Made by a program: the position numbers and the translations under genes
Origin: Octopus sinensis
Taxonomy: Eukaryota
Assembly (NCBI RefSeq): GCF_006345805.1
Contig: NC_043014.1
Location: forward strand, 27,962,001-28,026,000
Reading direction: 5' to 3'
Length of the DNA: 64,000 nucleotides
Notes under the pieces: generated by a model
What the model was told of the DNA's origin: nothing
What the model saw: only the letters and a program-made list of their open reading frames with translations
Database searches by the model: none
Part shown: piece after piece, positions 16,283 to 46,464 of the stretch
Numbering within the stretch: the stretch's first letter is position 1
Layout of the letters: every line of letters begins with the position of its first letter

Positions 16283-17160
16283 TGTGAACTGATCAATAAG
16301 TATCCAGACTGTTGCCATAGTAATGAAGCTAAAGCACACAGAGTGAAGCCGCTTGGCACAGATTGACCTTGAACTCTGCTGTGTATGCATACTAAGTTTT
16401 AACATTCTAACTCACTTCTGCTATTTACTGCAGTGCTTGGAAGGAAGGTGTGTAGTGTGTGATCGTCACATTGACCATGACAGAGAAAGTTGAACAGAGA
16501 ATCTGCATCAAATTTTGCCAAAAGTTTGGTAATACCTGCAAAGTTTTCATTGTTTTCGACACAGTCAAGGAGATCTTGTGCAGCTGAAACCTGAGTGTCT
16601 TTTTGCTCAGCTGAAAGCAGTTTGGACACAAACTTGACAGACATGTCTTGTCTCATACCCAAATCTCCAATGATAATGGACTGAACTGAATTGTAACTAA
16701 TCTGCACATCCTCTGATAACTCACAGATGGTGATTTGACGTTTTCGCCTCACAGCCACTTGCACATCTGTGATGTTTTTCTCAGGTCAGTTCTGCTGGTT
16801 GCGGGTCTCCCAGAACGTTTGTCAATATCTACATTTTTTTGGCCGTCTTGAAAACGTCTGAACCACTTGTACATTTGTGTGCTGCTCATACACTCCTCTC
16901 TATACACTTTCTGCAACTTTACATAGGCCTCTGAGCAGATCTCGCCATGAAAACTTCCTCTGTCATGGTCAATGCGACAATCACATGCTACATGCCTTCC
17001 TTTCAAGCACAGCTGTAAATAGCAGAAGTGAGCTAGAACATTAAAACTTAGTGCATGTGCACAGCAGAGTTCACAGTCAATCTTTGCCAAGCAACTTTGC
17101 TCTGCATGCTTTAGCTTCGTTACAATGGCAATAGTCCAGATACTAATTGATCAGACCTCA
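16283..17160 (-). mobile_element. Mariner-like element, internally deleted
   Basis: TA-flanked imperfect TIRs of about 70 bp (GAGGTCTGATCAATTAGTATC-like). Fragments YKWFRRFQDG, RSGRP, ITICELSEDVQISYNSVQSII and KFVSKLLSAEQK. Confidence 0.85.
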
Positions 17161-29364: not shown

Positions 29365-31130
29365 ATCATCATCATCGTTTAATGTCCGTTTTCCATGCTA
29401 GCATGGGTTGGACAGTTTGACCGGGGTCTGGGAAGCCAGGAGGCTGCACCAGGCTCCAGTCTAATCTGGCAGTTTTTCTACAGCTGGATGCCCTTCCTAA
29501 CTCCAACCACTCCGTGAGTGTATTGGGTACTTTTTACGGGCCAGAGGGGGCTGGCAATGGCCACGATTGGTTGATGCTTTTGTAGGAATGTATATAACCG
29601 TAACGTAAGATGGTTGGTGACAAGGTCTCCTCTTGTACGCTGCACGATCGTGCCAAAGGAAATGATGGAAGGACGACAAGCTGTTCTGCTGTTTGAGAGA
29701 GAAGATAGACTTTATTCATGGTTGTGATTACTAGCGTAGTGTTGTGGTATGAATTCATTCGTATAGTAATTGTGTCTGTGTGTTCGTGTGTGTGACAAGG
29801 TACAGATAAAGGTGCATGCAAATACAACAGAAATACAGAGTATAAGAGAAGTCTCAGCATATTGAGTTAAGATAGAGTTAGTTACCAGTTCATGTGGTAC
29901 GCGATAATAAGTTCTATAACAGATTTGGGTCTCGAAGCAGAGACTAGTTGAGTCACTTGTTGTGCAGGTTTCTCTTGATATAGATTATTCTTTCAGATAA
30001 TACTGCAACTGTTTTTCCATGGTGAAGTTTCACGCAAACAGCATGAGTTGAATCTGTGTAATTGTGTACAAGTTGAAATCTTCGGAGATGTAGACGACGT
30101 TAGTGATGATGTTCTGTCTGTCACTGGTATACAATAACGTCTTCGTTGTATGGTTGGCTGGCTGTCGTTTGTCATTCGAACTGGAACATGGCTGAGTAGC
30201 TCTGTGGTCTCCGACTAGACCTTAGAAGGTCTAAAGCCGAAAGATGATGAATAGTGGAAATACTAGCTTATTTAAAGAGTAAAGATGGCTCGAATGAAAG
30301 ATCCTATCCGAAGGCTGTGATTGATCAGTTTACACACTGGCGTGAAATAAGTAGAGAGACAGACTGCGCTAGATGCTAACCAATCAGATCAGTGAACACA
30401 ACAGGGTTAAACTAGCCAAAGATGGTTGTAATTTCAAACGAGATCATTCCTAATGTTTTTCTCAAACAGTGAGGATATCAATATTGTCACACTTTTTATG
30501 TGCCACCGGCATGGAAGCCAGTCAAGGCGGCACTGGCATTGGCTACGTTTGGATGGTGCTTTTTATGTGCCACCGGCATGGGTATCACAACTGCAATTTC
30601 CATTTGATTTTTATTTTGATGTTGATGTACTTGACTCAATAGGTCTCCTCAAGCACAGCACCCTATGATCCAAGGTGCTTTTGAATGGGCTGGGGCAGCT
30701 TATGCGAAACTGGTGTAGGATACAGCTGCGAACTTACTTTATTTGCCAGGTCTTCGCAGTCACAGCATATCTCCAGAGGTCTCGGTCTTTCGTCATTGCT
30801 TCTGTGAGGCCCAGTGTTCGAAGGTCATGCTTCACCACCTGATCCCATGTCTTCCTGGGTCTACCTCTACCCTGGATTCCTTTAACTGTTTGGGAATGGC
30901 ACTTCACACAGCTCTCCTCATCCATCTGTAGTACATGACTATACCAGCACAAACGTCTCTCTTGCACTCCACATCCGGTGCTTATGTCTGACATATCTCT
31001 CAGGGTGCTTAAACTCTGTCGTATGTACACTCTGACATTATACATCCAGTGGATCATGCTAGCTTCATTTCTTTCAAGCCTACGCATGTCCTCCGCAGTC
31101 ACGGCCCATGTTTCACTTCTGTTAATTATG
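29365..31130 (-). mobile_element. RTE LINE 3' fragment, split by the solo LTR
   Basis: Tail at 29365-29580 resumes at 30492. ORF 30734-31102 has MRRLERNEASM, RRLCWYSHV and GRGRPRKTW. Confidence 0.85.
29581..30491 (-). mobile_element. Solo LTR (911 bp) inserted into an RTE 3' region
   Basis: TGT...ACA termini with a CTTT duplication on both sides. It interrupts the RTE consensus gatgc-ttttt-atgtgccaccggc. Minus-strand AATAAA near 29712. Confidence 0.75.
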
Positions 31131-31444
31131 GATGAAGTGAGTATGGAACTAGTTATTAGCCTGGCGGAATGTAGTAAGGTTTGAATTCATGGTTGTGTAC
31201 TCAATTGTCTACCGTTTTGCCTTTATTATATAAATGGATAAGAAATTAGTAAAAACTGATCTCCCTTTATTTCTTTCTCTTTGCACAAACACACATTTAC
31301 ACACTCACAGAAAACATTTTATTATTTTAATTAAACCTTATTTTTGAGTATGGTATCCTTGAATCTGTGACCAGATGAAATTATTGTCAGAATTCGGTTC
31401 AGTGATTCCAGGAGGTATCACAACGTTTATTATTAATATTACTT

Positions 31445-41665: not shown

Positions 41666-42925
41666 GAAGGTATACATCTCCAAAAGAAATTTACAATTTT
41701 GTCAGAATCCTACATCAACAGTCTTATATTTACTGACACAAAATACAAGGCCAAGGAGGTCCTACAAAATAGCCAAAATGTAGGTTTGTAGTTTAGTCTT
41801 AATGCTGATGTTGATAAGTACAAACTACTTGTTATGGACGATACTTAGAGCAGTGTCTCATTAGTTAGAATAAGTTACTGTGTTTAAATAAAATAGATCA
41901 TATATAGAAAAAAATAAAATTACTGCATGTTTGTATATCAAAAATGGAAGTTCATTAGCATTCTTGACTTTTGGTTGTTTTGCTGTCCTTTAATCCAAGG
42001 TCAGCTCTGATTGATCATACCTTACAATTAGAGACATAGCAGCAGCTGTGATCATCCCATTCTTTTAGATATATGTAGGATTACATTATCAAAGATATCC
42101 TTTTTTTTTAGGGAATTTTGCTGATATTTTTTAGCAAATCGAATGACCGTGTAGCAGCTCACTTGTATGCTTTTGGTCTTCTCAATTGTTGTTCAACAAA
42201 ACTTTATATCACCAAAATCTTTGTATGAATCAGTTTTTTTTATTTCCTGCATTGTTCGTTGTATAGTACCAAATCATAAACGTTACTGTAGAATGGTTTG
42301 GATATGTTGATAGTCTTTCAAGCAAAATGTCTAATCCTTGGAGTATTGTGGATTAACTGTCTGCAATGATAAACTTGCTTGGCACTGTCATGGCTTTGGG
42401 TGTCAAAAGTGAAAGTAGAGAAATCTGACGTCAGACGTCAACTTCGTGTATTTACGTCGTCTTTCGTTTATTTACGCCGTTTATTTACGTACCACTGAAA
42501 TGCAAGTAAAAGCTTGTATGTATGTATGTATATATATATACATACATACATATATATACATATATATACATATACATATATATATATATATACATGTATT
42601 TTTAATCGGTCTTTTTTCTTAACCACTATACATTATATACATACATACAGATAGATAGATAGATACACACACACACATATAATAGATATGTACGTGTGTA
42701 CATTTTTCAGAAAAAAATTCATACATTTTAAATATCAATAGCATTTCTCTTATTTTTTACATGAAGTTTTCGAAAAATGAATTTAGAATGTAAAAATCAA
42801 ATATATCAAATTAATAAACGCAAATTATTTTCAAATATCATTTTCAACGGTGAGATTATCAAAATATAAACTTGAAGTTAAGTTTAAAAATAAATGCGAT
42901 ACTCATTCTGTCTTGATACTTATGC

Positions 42926-43831
42926 TCAAATACATGGATATAGCTGTCGAATTTGTTCTATCAACTTCCCGAATATATCATCCTTAAATTCATAGCGCCA
43001 CATGAATTCGATGAGATGGGTCTGAAGTAAATTTCTGGCTGTTCCACATTCTCTCCTATTTCGAGTCTTTACGTGTTTCCATAAACATTCTATGTGGTTG
43101 GTTGTGGCAAATGTTACCGGATCAACAAAATTTATAGAATGATTCACGGTCAAATGTCTGTATCCTAGCTGACTGAGTGTATTATACGAACGCCAAAGGT
43201 CGGATATTATTGTTGTACCAGGCAATATACGCTCGCGTATAATCTGTAATAGAGTGTCCGCTGTTCGATCTTCAACTGCCACTAAAATACATCTTCTACT
43301 ATCTCTTTCTAATGCACCAAACACCCATTGCGTTTTAACCCGATGGCCAACATGATATTTTCTCTTAACAAACGCAGTTTCATCTATTTCAACGATTCTA
43401 TTGGGTCCTCCCAGTTTAATATTCTGTGCAACATAATATTCTGCACATACATCGCGGCAAAAATTCCTCCAATCGGTTACCGCTACATTTGCTAAATGAC
43501 ATTCCTGTCCTATTCCTTTTGCTAAATCTTCTTTGGCCCAGTAAAACAAAATATCTATGATCTGTTGACACTTCAATTTGCTATTTTCTAAAAATGTTCC
43601 TTTTCTAATTGACACGGATTTTCTACAAGGTCTTCCACACGACCATATTATTTCATCAGATATATTTTTTTTCGTTACTTCTCTCATGGGAGCTCCACAC
43701 GATGTACATATTTTCTGGGTATTCAAAAGGCCATGTCTCTTAAGCCAATTAATGCTATCTGCTGTTGTAGCAGTGGAGACGGCAATATCGCGGTGACTAA
43801 TTCCTCTTAAACTTGGATATGCAAAAGCCAT
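42926..43831 (-). CDS. Merlin/ISXO2-like (DDE_Tnp_IS1595) transposase, intact, 301 aa
   Basis: WLKRHGLL, a C42/C45/C65/C69 zinc ribbon, SIRKGTF, VEIDET (D150), WVFG, TIISDLW (D211), HLTVNHS.NFVDP, TNHIECLW (E248) and EFMWR are all ISXO2/Merlin hallmarks. Confidence 0.93.
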   Translation of the reverse strand: MAFAYPSLRGISHRDIAVSTATTADSINWLKRHGLLNTQKICTSCGAPMREVTKKNISDEIIWSCGRPCRKSVSIRKGTFLENSKLKCQQIIDILFYWAKEDLAKGIGQECHLANVAVTDWRNFCRDVCAEYYVAQNIKLGGPNRIVEIDETAFVKRKYHVGHRVKTQWVFGALERDSRRCILVAVEDRTADTLLQIIRERILPGTTIISDLWRSYNTLSQLGYRHLTVNHSINFVDPVTFATTNHIECLWKHVKTRNRRECGTARNLLQTHLIEFMWRYEFKDDIFGKLIEQIRQLYPCI

Positions 43832-44231
43832 ATTAAAAATTGTTTAGCACGTGTTGATATCACACTGAAAGTTTCTAACTGAATAAATTTCAAAGTTTGA
43901 ATTACGCACGTGGTGGTCAGTGGTCATTCTGATTGGTGTATGTAATCGCGGTGATGGTCATGGGGGTTCATTTGTGCAGATTTTGGTGTGATTTCTTTTT
44001 TAAAAACAATAATGAATAATGCAAGAATATATTTATTCTTGCATTATTCATTATTGTTTTTAAAAAAGAAATCACACCAAAATCTGCACAAATGAACCCC
44101 CATGACCATCACCGCGATTACATACACCAATCAGAATGACCACTGACCACCACGTGCGTAATTCAAACTTTGAAATTTATTCAGTTAGAAACTTTCAGTG
44201 TGATATCAACACGTGCTAAACAATTTTTAAT

Positions 44232-45135
44232 ATGGCTTTTGCATATCCAAGTTTAAGAGGAATTAGTCACCGCGATATTGCCGTCTCCACTGCTACAACA
44301 GCAGATAGCATTAATTGGCTTAAGAGACATGGCCTTTTGAATACCCAGAAAATATGTACATCGTGTGGAGCTCCCATGAGAGAAGTAACGAAAAAAAATA
44401 TCTGATGAAATAATATGGTCGTGTGGAAGACCTTGTAGAAAATCCGTGTCAATTAGAAAAGGAACATTTTTAGAAAATAGCAAATTGAAGTGTCAACAGA
44501 TCATAGATATTTTGTTTTACTGGGCCAAAGAAGATTTAGCAAAAGGAATAGGACAGGAATGTCATTTAGCAAATGTAGCGGTAACCGATTGGAGGAATTT
44601 TTGCCGCGATGTATGTGCAGAATATTATGTTGCACAGAATATTAAACTGGGAGGACCCAATAGAATCGTTGAAATAGATGAAACTGCGTTTGTTAAGAGA
44701 AAATATCATGTTGGCCATCGGGTTAAAACGCAATGGGTGTTTGGTGCATTAGAAAGAGATAGTAGAAGATGTATTTTAGTGGCAGTTGAAGATCGAACAG
44801 CGGACACTCTATTACAGATTATACGCGAGCGTATATTGCCTGGTACAACAATAATATCCGACCTTTGGCGTTCGTATAATACACTCAGTCAGCTAGGATA
44901 CAGACATTTGACCGTGAATCATTCTATAAATTTTGTTGATCCGGTAACATTTGCCACAACCAACCACATAGAATGTTTATGGAAACACGTAAAGACTCGA
45001 AATAGGAGAGAATGTGGAACAGCCAGAAATTTACTTCAGACCCATCTCATCGAATTCATGTGGCGCTATGAATTTAAGGATGATATATTCGGGAAGTTGA
45101 TAGAACAAATTCGACAGCTATATCCATGTATTTGA
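44232..45135 (+). pseudogene. Second Merlin transposase copy, frameshifted
   Basis: Mirror ATG at 44232. It lacks 2 nt (TA) after the A8 run at 44391-44398, giving TGA at 44403-44405 (57 aa). The downstream 229 codons translate identically to the left copy. Confidence 0.88.
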
Positions 45136-46464
45136 GCATAAGTATCAAGACAGAATGAGTATCGCATTTATTTTTAAACTTAACTTCAAGTTTATATTTT
45201 GATAATCTCACCGTTGAAAATGATATTTGAAAATAATTTGCGTTTATTAATTTGATATATTTGATTTTTACATTCTAAATTCATTTTTCGAAAACTTCAT
45301 GTAAAAAATAAGAGAAATGCTATTGATATTTAAAATGTATGAATTTTTTTCTGAAAAATGTACACACGTACACATTTTATATCTATTATATGTGTGTGTG
45401 TGTATCTATCTATCTATCTGTATGTATGTATATAATGTATAGTGGTTAAGAAAAAAGACCGATTAAAAATACATGTATATATTATATATATGTATGTATT
45501 AAATATATATATATATGTATATATACATGTATATTATATATATGTGTGTATGTATGTATATATATATACATACATACATACAAGCTTTTACTTGCATTTC
45601 AGTGGTACGTAAATAAACGGCGTAAATAAACGAAAGACGACGTAAATACACGAAGTTGACGTCTGACGTCAGATTTCTCTACTTTCACTTTTGACACCCA
45701 AAGCCATGACAGTGCCACTTGCTTCAGTAATCAGTTCTACTGGTATGACTATGTGAATTGAATGGCTTATTCAAAATTGCCATACAGACTACTTCCACAT
45801 CTCTAGCCACAAAAGAGTATCGAAAAAGACTTGGCTAAAAATGATCTAATGAAATAAGAATAAACTAAAGATAACCATAGGAACACCTGGCAAAAGACTG
45901 GTGAAGCTTCAAAGAAATTGCCTGTGAATTAAGGGCACTTGAAGAGGAGGAGTGGTCCAGAGGAATAATCGAAGGTCACTCTCTGCTTAAAGGTTTCGTG
46001 TTGGTGCTGATGATGATACAGATGTTGGTTTCATTGAATAGCCTCAATGACTTCTTTTGAAGTAATTCTGTGGCACAAAGGTAACAAATAAACCAATTTC
46101 TGCTTATGACAAGTTTAGTTTAGTTTCATAGTTAAACCACTCTGATGCAAAGTGGAGGGTGAAGTGAATATCTCAAAATTTATTTCTCTCTTTCCTAAAG
46201 TCCACAGGGCTCATTTACTCAATGTTATAGTGTTTAACAACAGTCATACATTTAATGTTTATCACTTTTAATTTTCACAAATTAAGAAATAATTTATTAC
46301 TTTATTCTGTTATGAAATTCCATGTGATTTTGCAAGAACCATGCCAATTCACTATTTGACACAAGTCGAATACTAATTCCTTATCCATTCATTACAATTC
46401 CTATCGGTTTTCCACTCATTCCTTAGTATTTAAACTGCTATCTTTGTAATTTTCTCCTTTTCAG

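What the first reader, a model, noticed from the sequence alone, without database searches (positions are those of the whole stretch)
42373..45724. Two-headed, fully palindromic Merlin transposon with twin transposase genes
Seen: 42381-45716 is a single inverted repeat of about 1.65 kb per arm around a 4-nt centre, and each arm contains a whole ISXO2/Merlin transposase gene facing outward. Known: Merlin elements normally have short-to-moderate TIRs around one gene. Here the TIR is the entire half-element, including gene and promoter. Inference: this is either an undescribed natively palindromic Merlin architecture or a fold-back derivative that became mobile.
Basis: partly seen in the sequence, partly recalled or inferred. 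Interest (0 to 1): 0.92.

Follow-up and report, generated by a model that had tools for sequence, protein, structure and literature searches.

The report
Mobile palindromic Merlin transposon in octopus
A 3.3-kb jumping gene in an octopus genome is a near-perfect mirror image of itself carrying two copies of its transposase gene. It has inserted as a whole unit at several sites, arose by a fold-back copying error from an ordinary relative, and decays by deletions next to its centre.

Summary
Window 42381-45716 is an inverted repeat with arms of 1,649 and 1,683 nt around a 4-nt loop (TATT), flanked by an 8-bp target-site duplication (ACTTGCTT). Each arm carries a Merlin/IS1595 transposase gene reading outward from the centre. 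One correction: only the left gene is intact (301 aa). The right copy has a 2-bp deletion that shifts the frame.

It is not an assembly artefact. The same genome holds three more full palindromes, each with its own 8-bp duplication. About 15 further loci keep one complete arm, the same loop and 0-29 nt (once 196 nt) of the second arm before a deletion.

Conventional 1.6-kb relatives also exist, with one gene, a ~53-bp TIR and two different subterminal regions. They are more diverged. They read GAATA-TATT-TATT-TATAAAG exactly where the palindrome reads GAATA-TATT-TATT-CTTGC. That fits a single fold-back priming event on a 4-nt microhomology.

Every deletion junction is unique to its locus, so the moving unit was most likely the full palindrome. 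The one-sided decay products are one-gene elements with TIRs of 126-760 bp that include coding sequence. All seven informative substitutions among the full copies sit in both arms, so the arms evolve in concert.

Verdict: a new structural variant of a known superfamily. It is interesting, mainly as a visible route to long TIRs.

The parts
42373..42380 (.). Left target-site duplication ACTTGCTT
   Evidence: Direct reading. It is identical to 45717-45724.
42381..45716 (.). Whole palindromic Merlin element (3,336 bp)
   Evidence: It is bounded by 5'-GGCACTGTCATGG termini and the TSD.
42381..44029 (+). Left arm (1,649 nt, terminus to centre)
42381..42520 (+). Left terminus and subterminal region of the 'T5' type. 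It holds a CRE-like TGACGTCA palindrome and three TTTATTTACG repeats. Only the first ~53 nt are shared by both ends of conventional relatives.
42515..42700 (.). Microsatellite-rich stretch of the left arm, which holds most of the differences between the arms
42926..43831 (-). Intact transposase gene, 301 aa. Candidate zinc-finger cysteines C42, C45, C65; DDE residues D150, D211, E248.
   Evidence: (PF12762, E = 1.6e-18).
43832..44231 (.). Central 400-bp palindromic spacer between the two ATGs. Each half (198 nt) is the 5' upstream region shared with conventional copies. The presumed divergent promoters are inferred, not shown.
44030..44033 (.). Asymmetric 4-nt loop TATT (AATA on the other strand), shared by all copies of the lineage
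44034..45716 (-). Right arm (1,683 nt)
44232..45135 (+). Second transposase gene, frameshifted by a 2-bp (AT) deletion near 44400. The first frame ends at 44405; the remainder is open as 44389-45135.
45577..45716 (-). Right terminus and subterminal region, T5 type, identical to the left one
45717..45724 (.). Right target-site duplication ACTTGCTT

Best explanation
This is a young, mobile, fully palindromic member of a Merlin (IS1595-like) DNA-transposon family of an Octopus genome.

Origin (inferred from sequence comparison). A conventional ~1.6-kb element has one gene, a ~53-bp TIR and different 5' (T5) and 3' (T3) subterminal regions. A DNA 3' end stopped 8 nt past the end of the 5' upstream region, at ...GCAAGAATA-TATT-TATT. 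It folded back on the 4-nt complement AATA/TATT, leaving a 4-nt loop, and copied the element's own strand back to the terminus. This replaced the 5' end with an inverted copy of everything else. The event happened once, because every copy carries the same asymmetric loop.

Movement (shown by TSDs; the enzymology is inferred from the superfamily). The two identical ends are cut and pasted by the DDE transposase as one 3.3-kb unit, making 8-bp target duplications. The transposase may come from its own intact gene or from relatives.

Maintenance (observed; mechanism inferred). Substitutions that distinguish copies are present in both arms. So the arms are homogenised in the active lineage, by arm-to-arm conversion or by mismatch repair in the snapped-back hairpin.

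Decay (observed pattern; mechanism inferred). The palindrome is resolved by one-sided deletions that start 0-29 nt beyond the loop and end deep in one arm or beyond it, with 1-7 nt of microhomology. Two mechanisms fit: a centre break of an extruded hairpin followed by end joining, or abortive gap repair after excision in which the new strand stalls when it snaps back just past the centre. The products are one-gene elements with TIRs of 126-760 bp that include the 3' end of the coding sequence.
For: - Structure and TSD.
- Merlin identity: PF12762 at E = 1.6e-18; D150/D211/E248 and Cys residues conserved across 14 homologues; nearest proteins are Octopus bimaculoides and O. sinensis ISXO2-like transposases.
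- Three other full palindromes, each with its own TSD: C5:62.82 Mb CCTGACAC, C4:155.06 Mb ATACATAA, C18:14.98 Mb GTTCGTTC.
- An exact-pattern search finds the 12+4+12-nt centre at 13 loci, plus one more with a 3-nt loop.
- Derivatives keep one full arm, the loop and 3, 11, 21, 8, 18, 196, 14, 11, ~1, 4, 2, 5, 29 or 5 nt of the second arm. Six junctions carry 1-7 nt of microhomology, and all junctions differ. Most have their own TSDs.
- Conventional copies (L026/L050, L027-L030) all read GAATATATTTATT|TATAAAG at the boundary. They have T5 and T3 ends and TSDs.
- The conventional layout is found in at least 12 loci, down to 75-85% identity. In the 1.1-kb core, the youngest (crown) group of palindrome-lineage copies is 98.6-99.8% identical to this copy; the basal members of the lineage are ~96-97% and the conventional copies ~95%.
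- Rooted on the conventional copies, the tree orders the groups as conventional | T3-ended derivatives with a centre remnant | T5/T5 derivative | crown palindromes.
- 7 of 7 informative substitutions are symmetric between arms.
- Literature: palindromic transgenes in mouse lose central symmetry through small asymmetric deletions (PMC8701086, citing Akgun 1997 and Cunningham 2003).
Against: - No reads were available, so the structure rests on one assembly. The flanks are single-copy and no empty-site haplotig exists in the assembly.
- Seven of the eight arms of the four full palindromes are frameshifted in this assembly. Self-sufficiency is therefore unproven, and the family may be close to extinction unless many of these indels are consensus errors.
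- The palindrome's ends are T5-type, although a plain fold-back of the conventional element would give T3-type ends. An extra end-swap step must be assumed. It is supported only by intermediates: L044 is T3/T3, L043 is T3/T5, L046 is T5/T5.
- The tree was rooted by assumption on the conventional copies. More diverged copies could not be fetched.
- The symmetry test rests on only seven sites.
Confidence: 0.72

Rival explanations
1. Assembly artefact. The palindrome was created by chimeric or fold-back long reads (a missed adapter or snap-back molecules), and the real locus holds a single-arm element.
For: Palindromes are a known failure mode of long-read libraries (my own knowledge). No reads could be examined here. 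Single-base indels are frequent in some copies, for example arm B of L032, which points to an imperfect consensus.
Against: The mirror symmetry stops exactly at the transposon termini and is flanked by two different unique sequences sharing an 8-bp TSD. The arms differ by microsatellite lengths and a 2-bp indel. Three other loci have the same architecture with their own TSDs. A dozen more keep the same asymmetric loop with different deletions.
Confidence: 0.03
2. The palindrome is the ancestral, native architecture of this Merlin family. The 'conventional' one-gene copies would themselves be old centre-deletion derivatives: 4 nt (TATT) of a second arm kept, resuming at the inverted copy of arm positions 531-484.
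For: Conventional copies carry GAATA-TATT-TATT, followed about 14 nt later by an inverted ~48-nt copy of arm 484-531 and then the terminus. This is the same layout as the proven derivatives.
Against: Conventional copies have two clearly different subterminal regions, T5 and T3, which a decayed palindrome would not have. Their inverted 484-531 segment is only 87-90% identical to the palindrome arm's 484-531, against ~95% for the core, so any such event would be much older. All the most diverged copies (75-85% identity) have the conventional layout.
Confidence: 0.1
3. Full palindromes are repeatedly regenerated dead ends. The real masters would be one-gene derivatives that keep a short central hairpin. 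Template switching at that hairpin, or conversion of the truncated arm by the full arm, would rebuild a perfect second arm each time. That would explain why the arms are symmetric.
For: Symmetry of all 7 informative substitutions. Intact 301-aa frames are commoner in one-gene derivatives (L035b, L036, L038, L039, L043, L044) than in full palindromes, where 1 of 8 arms is intact.
Against: No deletion junction is shared between two loci, apart from a haplotig duplicate and one internal tandem copy. So no derivative type shows signs of having multiplied. Rebuilding would require homology of only 3-29 nt on the centre side.
Confidence: 0.1
4. Passive passenger. The palindrome is non-autonomous in practice and is moved only by transposase from conventional or derivative copies. 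The twin genes would be irrelevant cargo, and the element may instead act as a source of hairpin RNA that silences the family, as Mu killer does.
For: 7 of 8 genes in full palindromes are frameshifted. Intact genes exist elsewhere in the family. Inverted duplications of transposase genes give silencing dsRNA in maize (PMC3440606; bioRxiv 10.1101/2020.01.07.897926).
Against: The copy in this window has an intact 301-aa frame with a complete DDE triad. The two genes are transcribed divergently from the centre, so their mRNAs are identical rather than complementary. A hairpin RNA would need read-through from outside. No expression data are available.
Confidence: 0.3

Closest known systems
Merlin superfamily of DNA transposons (Feschotte 2004; survey in PMC8101967), related to bacterial IS1016/IS1595
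   Same: DDE_Tnp_IS1595 catalytic domain with a conserved DDE triad, an N-terminal Cys-rich region, a ~300-aa intronless transposase, 5'-GG termini and an 8-bp TSD. Merlin is already known to be abundant in Octopus bimaculoides (191 sequences, PMC8101967).
   Different: Described Merlin TIRs are 24-462 bp around a single gene (PMC8101967). Here each 'TIR' is 1,649-1,683 nt, which is the whole half-element, and the gene is present twice, head to head.
Galileo (P superfamily, Drosophila) and other Foldback-like elements
   Same: Very long, dynamic TIRs. In Galileo, non-TIR sequence including more than 500 bp of the transposase ORF is recruited into both TIRs, and secondary insertions in one TIR become part of both (PMC4168063). 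The octopus family behaves likewise: derivatives have TIRs reaching into the ORF, and inserts and microsatellites are present in both arms.
   Different: It belongs to a different superfamily. [quoted passage not shown] Classical FB arms are built of tandem subrepeats, which these arms are not. In the octopus family the direction of change can be read: full palindrome first, shorter TIRs by deletion.
Mu killer and Ac 'killer' composite insertions of maize
   Same: An inverted duplication of one transposon end plus transposase gene sequence, so both ends are of the same type. These arise by aberrant replication or transposition (PMC3440606; bioRxiv 10.1101/2020.01.07.897926).
   Different: Those are single, immobile, partial rearrangements known through their silencing effect. 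The octopus element is complete, bounded by functional-looking ends and a TSD, and present at many loci. Silencing was not tested.
Palindromic transgenes and fold-back inversions (centre-break resolution; snap-back priming at short inverted repeats)
   Same: A short asymmetric spacer with a few nt of microhomology at the centre. Instability is resolved by small asymmetric deletions that destroy central symmetry (PMC8701086 and references there).
   Different: Those are chromosomal or transgene rearrangements. Here the palindrome is itself a transposon, so the process repeats at many loci and leaves a series of products.

Membership tests
Merlin superfamily (eukaryotic IS1595-like DNA transposons) | Transposase with a DDE_Tnp_IS1595 (ISXO2-like) catalytic domain | tested here: met
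   PF12762 at E = 1.6e-18, 67.6 bits against a cut-off of 27, residues 147-280. The right-arm frame gives E = 1e-18.
Merlin superfamily (eukaryotic IS1595-like DNA transposons) | Conserved D-D-E catalytic residues | tested here: met
   D211 is invariant; D150 and E248 are at least 90% conserved in an alignment with 13 homologues from octopus, mussel, cnidarians, sponge and spider.
Merlin superfamily (eukaryotic IS1595-like DNA transposons) | 8- or 9-bp target-site duplication | tested here: met
   ACTTGCTT on both sides of this copy. Perfect 8-bp TSDs flank 11 other family copies and near-perfect ones (6-7 of 8 positions) flank 2 more.
Merlin superfamily (eukaryotic IS1595-like DNA transposons) | Termini beginning 5'-GG | tested here: met
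   GGCACTGTCATG at both ends. The criterion is from PMC8101967.
Merlin superfamily (eukaryotic IS1595-like DNA transposons) | Usual architecture: one transposase gene between TIRs of 24-462 bp | tested here: not met
   This copy has arms of 1,649 and 1,683 nt and two gene copies. Conventional relatives in the same genome do meet it, with a ~53-bp TIR and one gene in about 1.6-1.7 kb. This is a description of known members rather than a strict criterion.
Foldback (FB) elements in the strict sense | Long inverted arms built of tandem subrepeats, with little or no coding middle | tested here: not met
   The arms are unique sequence carrying a gene, with only microsatellite tracts and one 46-bp repeat region.
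Galileo-type long-TIR elements | P-superfamily (THAP/P-type) transposase | tested here: not met
   The only Pfam hit is the IS1595-type DDE domain.
Transposon 'killer' loci (Mu killer type) | Transcribed inverted duplication giving hairpin RNA and small RNAs that silence the family | not testable with these tools
   No expression or small-RNA data are available. Only the DNA architecture is comparable.

The most novel reading that the evidence does not exclude
Palindromisation followed by centre-proximal decay may be a general, repeating route by which DNA transposons gain long TIRs that reach into their own coding sequence. Within such palindromic transposons the two arms would be kept identical by a hairpin-based process linked to propagation, so that new copies are born symmetric. 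The octopus family would be the first case in which the full palindrome, its conventional precursor and a graded series of decay products (TIRs of 126, ~450, 488, 614, 679 and 760 bp) are all caught in one genome. The inverted 48-nt segment already present in the conventional copies would be the vestige of an earlier cycle.
Probability: 0.3. Interest if true: 0.75.

Novelty: new variant of a known kind. Interest (0 to 1): 0.62.

Why it matters
Three reasons.

1. It shows that a DDE cut-and-paste transposon can move while being a perfect 3.3-kb palindrome with two identical ends. This bears on how much end asymmetry and internal structure a Merlin transposase needs.

2. It gives a concrete, sequence-documented mechanism for an old descriptive puzzle: how TIRs grow to hundreds or thousands of bases and come to include ORF fragments, as described for Galileo. 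The mechanism is a fold-back followed by one-sided deletion from the centre.

3. It is a natural many-locus experiment on palindrome instability and arm-to-arm homogenisation in an animal germ line. It is also a candidate source of hairpin RNA against its own family.

It is still a member of a known superfamily in a genome already known to be rich in Merlin, so the interest is structural and mechanistic rather than categorical.

Tried and rejected
- I first read the 'arm + truncated partner' copies as conventional elements with long, diverged TIRs and a fixed inner boundary at arm position 1651. The junction print disproved this: each keeps the loop and a few nt of the second arm, so they are deletion products. 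The low identity of the partner segments (83-86%) comes from microsatellite indels.
- A simple fold-back of the L050-type conventional element does not explain the T5-type ends. I had to add an end-swap step, supported only by intermediates.
- A search for an empty-site allele or haplotig using the joined flanks found only the two flanks at the locus itself.
- The look-up of encoding contigs with the 301-aa protein and with P0002 found nothing. The O. bimaculoides contig encoding P0001 (L054) matches only arm 453-1459 at 79% identity, has Ns and shows no recognisable termini, so it says nothing about architecture in that species.
I therefore used the coordinate tables to infer their layout.
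- Rfam found nothing in the window.
- Literature searches for a transposon whose TIRs contain the entire transposase gene, or for palindromic Merlin, found no precedent. Repbase and Dfam could not be queried.
Full report
**1. The observation**

The repeat finder reports window 42380-45717 as a nested set of inverted-repeat blocks. These amount to one palindrome with 4 nt between the innermost arms (43662-44029 / 44034-44401, 100% complementary).

I aligned the left half with the reverse complement of the right half. The arms are 1,649 and 1,683 nt long. All differences fall into three classes:
- microsatellite-length indels of 5, 24 and 7 nt;
- a handful of substitutions inside a (TA/CA)n tract at 42551-42569;
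- one AT dinucleotide present at 43660-43661 and missing from the right arm.

Outside the microsatellites there is no substitution.

The element starts and ends with GGCACTGTCATGG and is flanked by ACTTGCTT on both sides (42373-42380 and 45717-45724). The centre is the non-palindromic tetranucleotide TATT (44030-44033).

Each arm holds an open frame reading from the centre outward. The left one (42926-43831, minus strand) is an intact 301-aa protein matching Pfam DDE_Tnp_IS1595 at E = 1.6e-18. The right one stops after 57 codons because of the 2-bp deletion and continues in another frame. In this assembly one gene is intact and one is frameshifted. The frameshift lies next to a T8 run and could be a consensus error.

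**2. Identity**

The protein aligns with homologues from octopus, mussels, cnidarians, a sponge and a spider. D211 is invariant, D150 and E248 are nearly invariant, and so are C42, C45 and C65.

The best database hits are 'ISXO2-like transposase domain' proteins of Octopus bimaculoides and O. sinensis at 71-91% identity. The genome is 2.72 Gb in 13,516 contigs. The host is therefore an Octopus; I did not establish the species.

The published Merlin hallmarks are TIRs of 24-462 bp, 5'-GG ends, 8-9-bp TSDs and the IS1595-type DDE domain (PMC8101967, citing Feschotte 2004). All are met except the TIR length and the single gene. That survey already noted that Merlin is unusually abundant in O. bimaculoides.

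**3. Not an artefact, and not alone**

I searched the whole genome with one arm and mapped the hits on fetched loci.

There are three more full palindromes: C5:62,817,221-62,820,591, C4:155,056,078-155,059,444 and C18:14,978,782-14,982,244. Each is flanked by its own 8-bp duplication: CCTGACAC, ATACATAA and GTTCGTTC.

An exact pattern search for the 12+4+12-nt centre finds 13 loci and no hits for the reversed control. The C5 copy has a 3-nt loop and adds a fourteenth.

An artefact of fold-back reads would not end precisely at transposon termini between two different unique flanks. It would not differ between arms in microsatellite length, and it would not recur at several loci with different TSDs. 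The flanks of this copy are single-copy in the assembly, and no empty-site haplotig exists.

**4. A series of decay products**

Many other loci carry one complete arm followed by something shorter. Printing the sequence across arm position 1651 shows that each keeps the loop (AATA or TATT, depending on which arm survived) and then a short piece of the second arm. After that piece, the sequence jumps either to a more terminal part of the inverted arm or to unrelated DNA. The details are as follows.

| Feature | Observed values |
|---|---|
| Second-arm nt kept after the loop | 3, 11, 21, 8, 18, 14, 11, ~1, 4, 2, 5, 29, 5; once 196 |
| Arm position where the inverted arm resumes | 126, ~450, 488, 614, 679, 760, 1323 |
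| Loci that jump to unrelated DNA instead | L041, L042, L045, L047 |
| Junctions with measurable microhomology | 6, with 1-7 nt |
| Derivatives with both termini and their own perfect 8-bp TSD | L034, L035, L036, L037, L043, L046 |

All junctions are different. The only exceptions are a haplotig duplicate (C1 and C9710, same flank) and an internal tandem copy in L035.

The products are one-gene elements. Their TIRs of 126-760 bp include, from position 546 inward, the 3' end of the coding sequence.

Because no junction is shared between loci, no derivative shows evidence of having multiplied. The simplest reading is that the unit that inserted at these roughly 15-20 loci was the full palindrome, and that the deletions came afterwards.

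The pattern has one breakpoint within about 30 nt of the symmetry centre and the other far away in one arm. That matches what is described for palindromic transgenes in mouse, where central asymmetric deletions stabilise the palindrome (PMC8701086, citing the centre-break work).

An equally good mechanism is abortive gap repair at a donor site after excision. In that case the strand copied from the sister chromatid would snap back on itself as soon as it passes the centre. It would then be joined by microhomology to the shorter strand coming from the other end. I cannot tell the two mechanisms apart. Copies whose deletion runs out of the element favour a chromosomal event for at least some.

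**5. Conventional relatives and the origin of the palindrome**

A second class of copies (L026 = L050, L027-L030, and others listed) is 1.6-1.7 kb long with one gene. Their TIR is about 53 bp with one mismatch. They have two different subterminal regions:
- T5 (GACGTCAGACGTCAACTTCGTGTATTTACGTC...) lies next to the gene's 5' end.
- T3 (GACGTCATTTTGACGTCACACTTTTTCTCG...) lies next to its 3' end.

These copies have their own TSDs: GAGAGTTT, AAATATTC and AGCAGAcA.

All five sequenced examples read ...GCAAGAATA TATT TATT TATAAAG... at the end of the 5' upstream region. The palindrome reads ...GCAAGAATA TATT TATT CTTGC.... The two agree through the loop and the first four bases of the second arm. 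The last TATT is the complement of the AATA just before the loop.

A 3' end terminating there can pair back with a 4-bp stem and a 4-nt loop and prime copying of its own strand. This is the classical fold-back signature. The same asymmetric loop in every copy argues for a single founding event.

Three results support conventional-to-palindrome as the direction of change:
- The conventional layout (T5 within 50-130 nt of position 1651) is the one seen in all the most diverged copies, at 75-89% identity, in at least 12 loci.
- In the 1.1-kb core, the youngest (crown) palindrome-lineage copies are 98.6-99.8% identical to this copy. The basal members of the lineage (L043-L046) are about 96-97% and the conventional copies about 95%.
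- A maximum-likelihood tree rooted on the conventional copies places the groups in this order: conventional; three derivatives with T3-type ends and a centre remnant (L043-L045); a T5/T5 derivative (L046); L042; then the crown group with all four full palindromes.

The rooting is an assumption, because I could not fetch the older copies.

**6. A complication**

A plain fold-back of the conventional element should give T3-type ends on both sides, yet this copy and its close relatives have T5-type ends.

The early-branching derivatives bridge the gap. L044 is T3/T3, L043 has one end of each type, and L046 and the crown group are T5/T5. I infer an end swap by recombination or template switching with conventional copies through the shared 53-bp TIR, followed by symmetrisation. 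This step is inferred, not shown.

The arms later gained an insert and expanding microsatellites, which are again present in both arms.

Conventional copies themselves already carry an inverted ~48-nt copy of arm 484-531 between T5 and the 5' upstream region. This could be a vestige of an older cycle of the same kind.

**7. Concerted arms**

I aligned the eight arms of the four full palindromes, oriented by the loop. All seven substitution or indel sites whose minority state occurs in at least two arms are symmetric, meaning both arms of a copy share the state:

| Arm position | Copies carrying the minority state in both arms |
|---|---|
| 13 | this copy |
| 26, 419, 693, 856, 944 | L033 |
| 890 | L031 and L033 |

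The one exception is a homopolymer indel. Arm-private changes are all singletons.

A mutation arises in one arm. Finding it in both arms of every descendant therefore requires homogenisation in the propagating lineage. Candidates are arm-to-arm gene conversion, mismatch repair in a snapped-back hairpin, or rebuilding of one arm from the other. With seven sites this is suggestive rather than proven. Galileo shows the same phenomenon at the level of TIRs (PMC4168063).

**8. Coding state**

Among the eight genes of the four full palindromes, only the left gene of this window is intact. Intact 301-aa frames also occur in several one-gene derivatives (L035b, L036, L038, L039, L043, L044) and in one conventional copy (L030).

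Whether the palindrome moves itself or is moved in trans is therefore open. Some of the frameshifts may be assembly errors.

**9. Comparison and novelty**

- **Merlin.** The element is a member by protein, ends and TSD, with a structure outside the described range.
- **Galileo.** It behaves like Galileo and Foldback-like elements in having long, dynamic, concerted TIRs that take in ORF sequence (PMC4168063). It belongs to another superfamily, and here the TIR is the entire half-element with a complete gene.
- **Maize killer loci.** It resembles Mu killer and the Ac 'killer' composite insertions in being an inverted duplication of one end plus transposase gene (PMC3440606; bioRxiv 10.1101/2020.01.07.897926). 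Those are single, partial and immobile.

I found no report of a palindromic Merlin, or of a eukaryotic DNA transposon whose TIRs contain the whole transposase gene. Repbase and Dfam could not be checked.

I rate it a new variant of a known kind. Its main value is as a caught-in-the-act example of how long TIRs can arise and decay.

Noticed in passing
window 16749-17150 (minus strand): A 133-aa open frame with a Pfam HTH_48 hit (Mos1 transposase HTH, E = 2.6e-6). It is a mariner-like transposase remnant.
   Followed up: partly
window 30734-31186 (minus strand): A 150-aa open frame ending ...RGRPRKTWDQVVKHDLRTLGL...DRDLWRY with no significant Pfam hit. From memory it looks like the tail of a retroelement ORF; this is unverified.
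   Followed up: partly
L046 (G000:C16:32,482,898-32,485,038), both arms; remnants in L042 and at window 42604-42625: Both arms of this T5/T5 derivative carry the same ~110-nt insert (GACTACGGCCATGCAGGAGCACCGCCTTTAGTCGCACAAATCGACCCCAGAAC...), possibly SINE-derived. Pieces of it survive in the younger arms. An insert present in both arms parallels the 'TE insertion copied to both TIRs' described for Galileo.
   Followed up: no
L035 (G000:C15:13,637,379-13,641,832): Two tandem units of one and the same deletion derivative (identical centre junction) sit inside a single TSD, AAAGGTTC. This is an internal duplication of a decayed palindrome.
   Followed up: partly
L038 (G000:C3:13.07 Mb) and L044 (G000:C8:51.06 Mb): Both have two termini but no matching TSD. 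This may be the footprint of ectopic recombination between two copies, that is, a rearrangement.
   Followed up: no
L039 (G000:C1:154.19 Mb) and L040 (unplaced G000:C9710): Same element, same flank (attcggtcattc) and same 196-nt second-arm remnant. The unplaced contig is probably a haplotig duplicate of the C1 locus.
   Followed up: partly
L032 (G000:C4:155.06 Mb), arm B: About 25 private changes, mostly single-base deletions, against very few in arm A. This is either local consensus error in the assembly or asymmetric decay. It affects how far the frameshifts can be trusted.
   Followed up: no
window 42423-42438 and 45659-45674; all family termini: The TIR contains CRE-like palindromes (TGACGTCA GACGTCA). 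The T5 subterminal region has three to five TTTATTTACG(C/T) direct repeats whose number varies between copies. These may be transposase binding sites.
   Followed up: no
conventional copies L026-L030, between T5 and the 5' upstream region: An inverted ~48-nt copy of arm positions 484-531 (87-90% identical to the palindrome arm's 484-531) already flanks the gene on the 5' side. It is either an extended subterminal inverted repeat or a vestige of an older fold-back cycle.
   Followed up: partly
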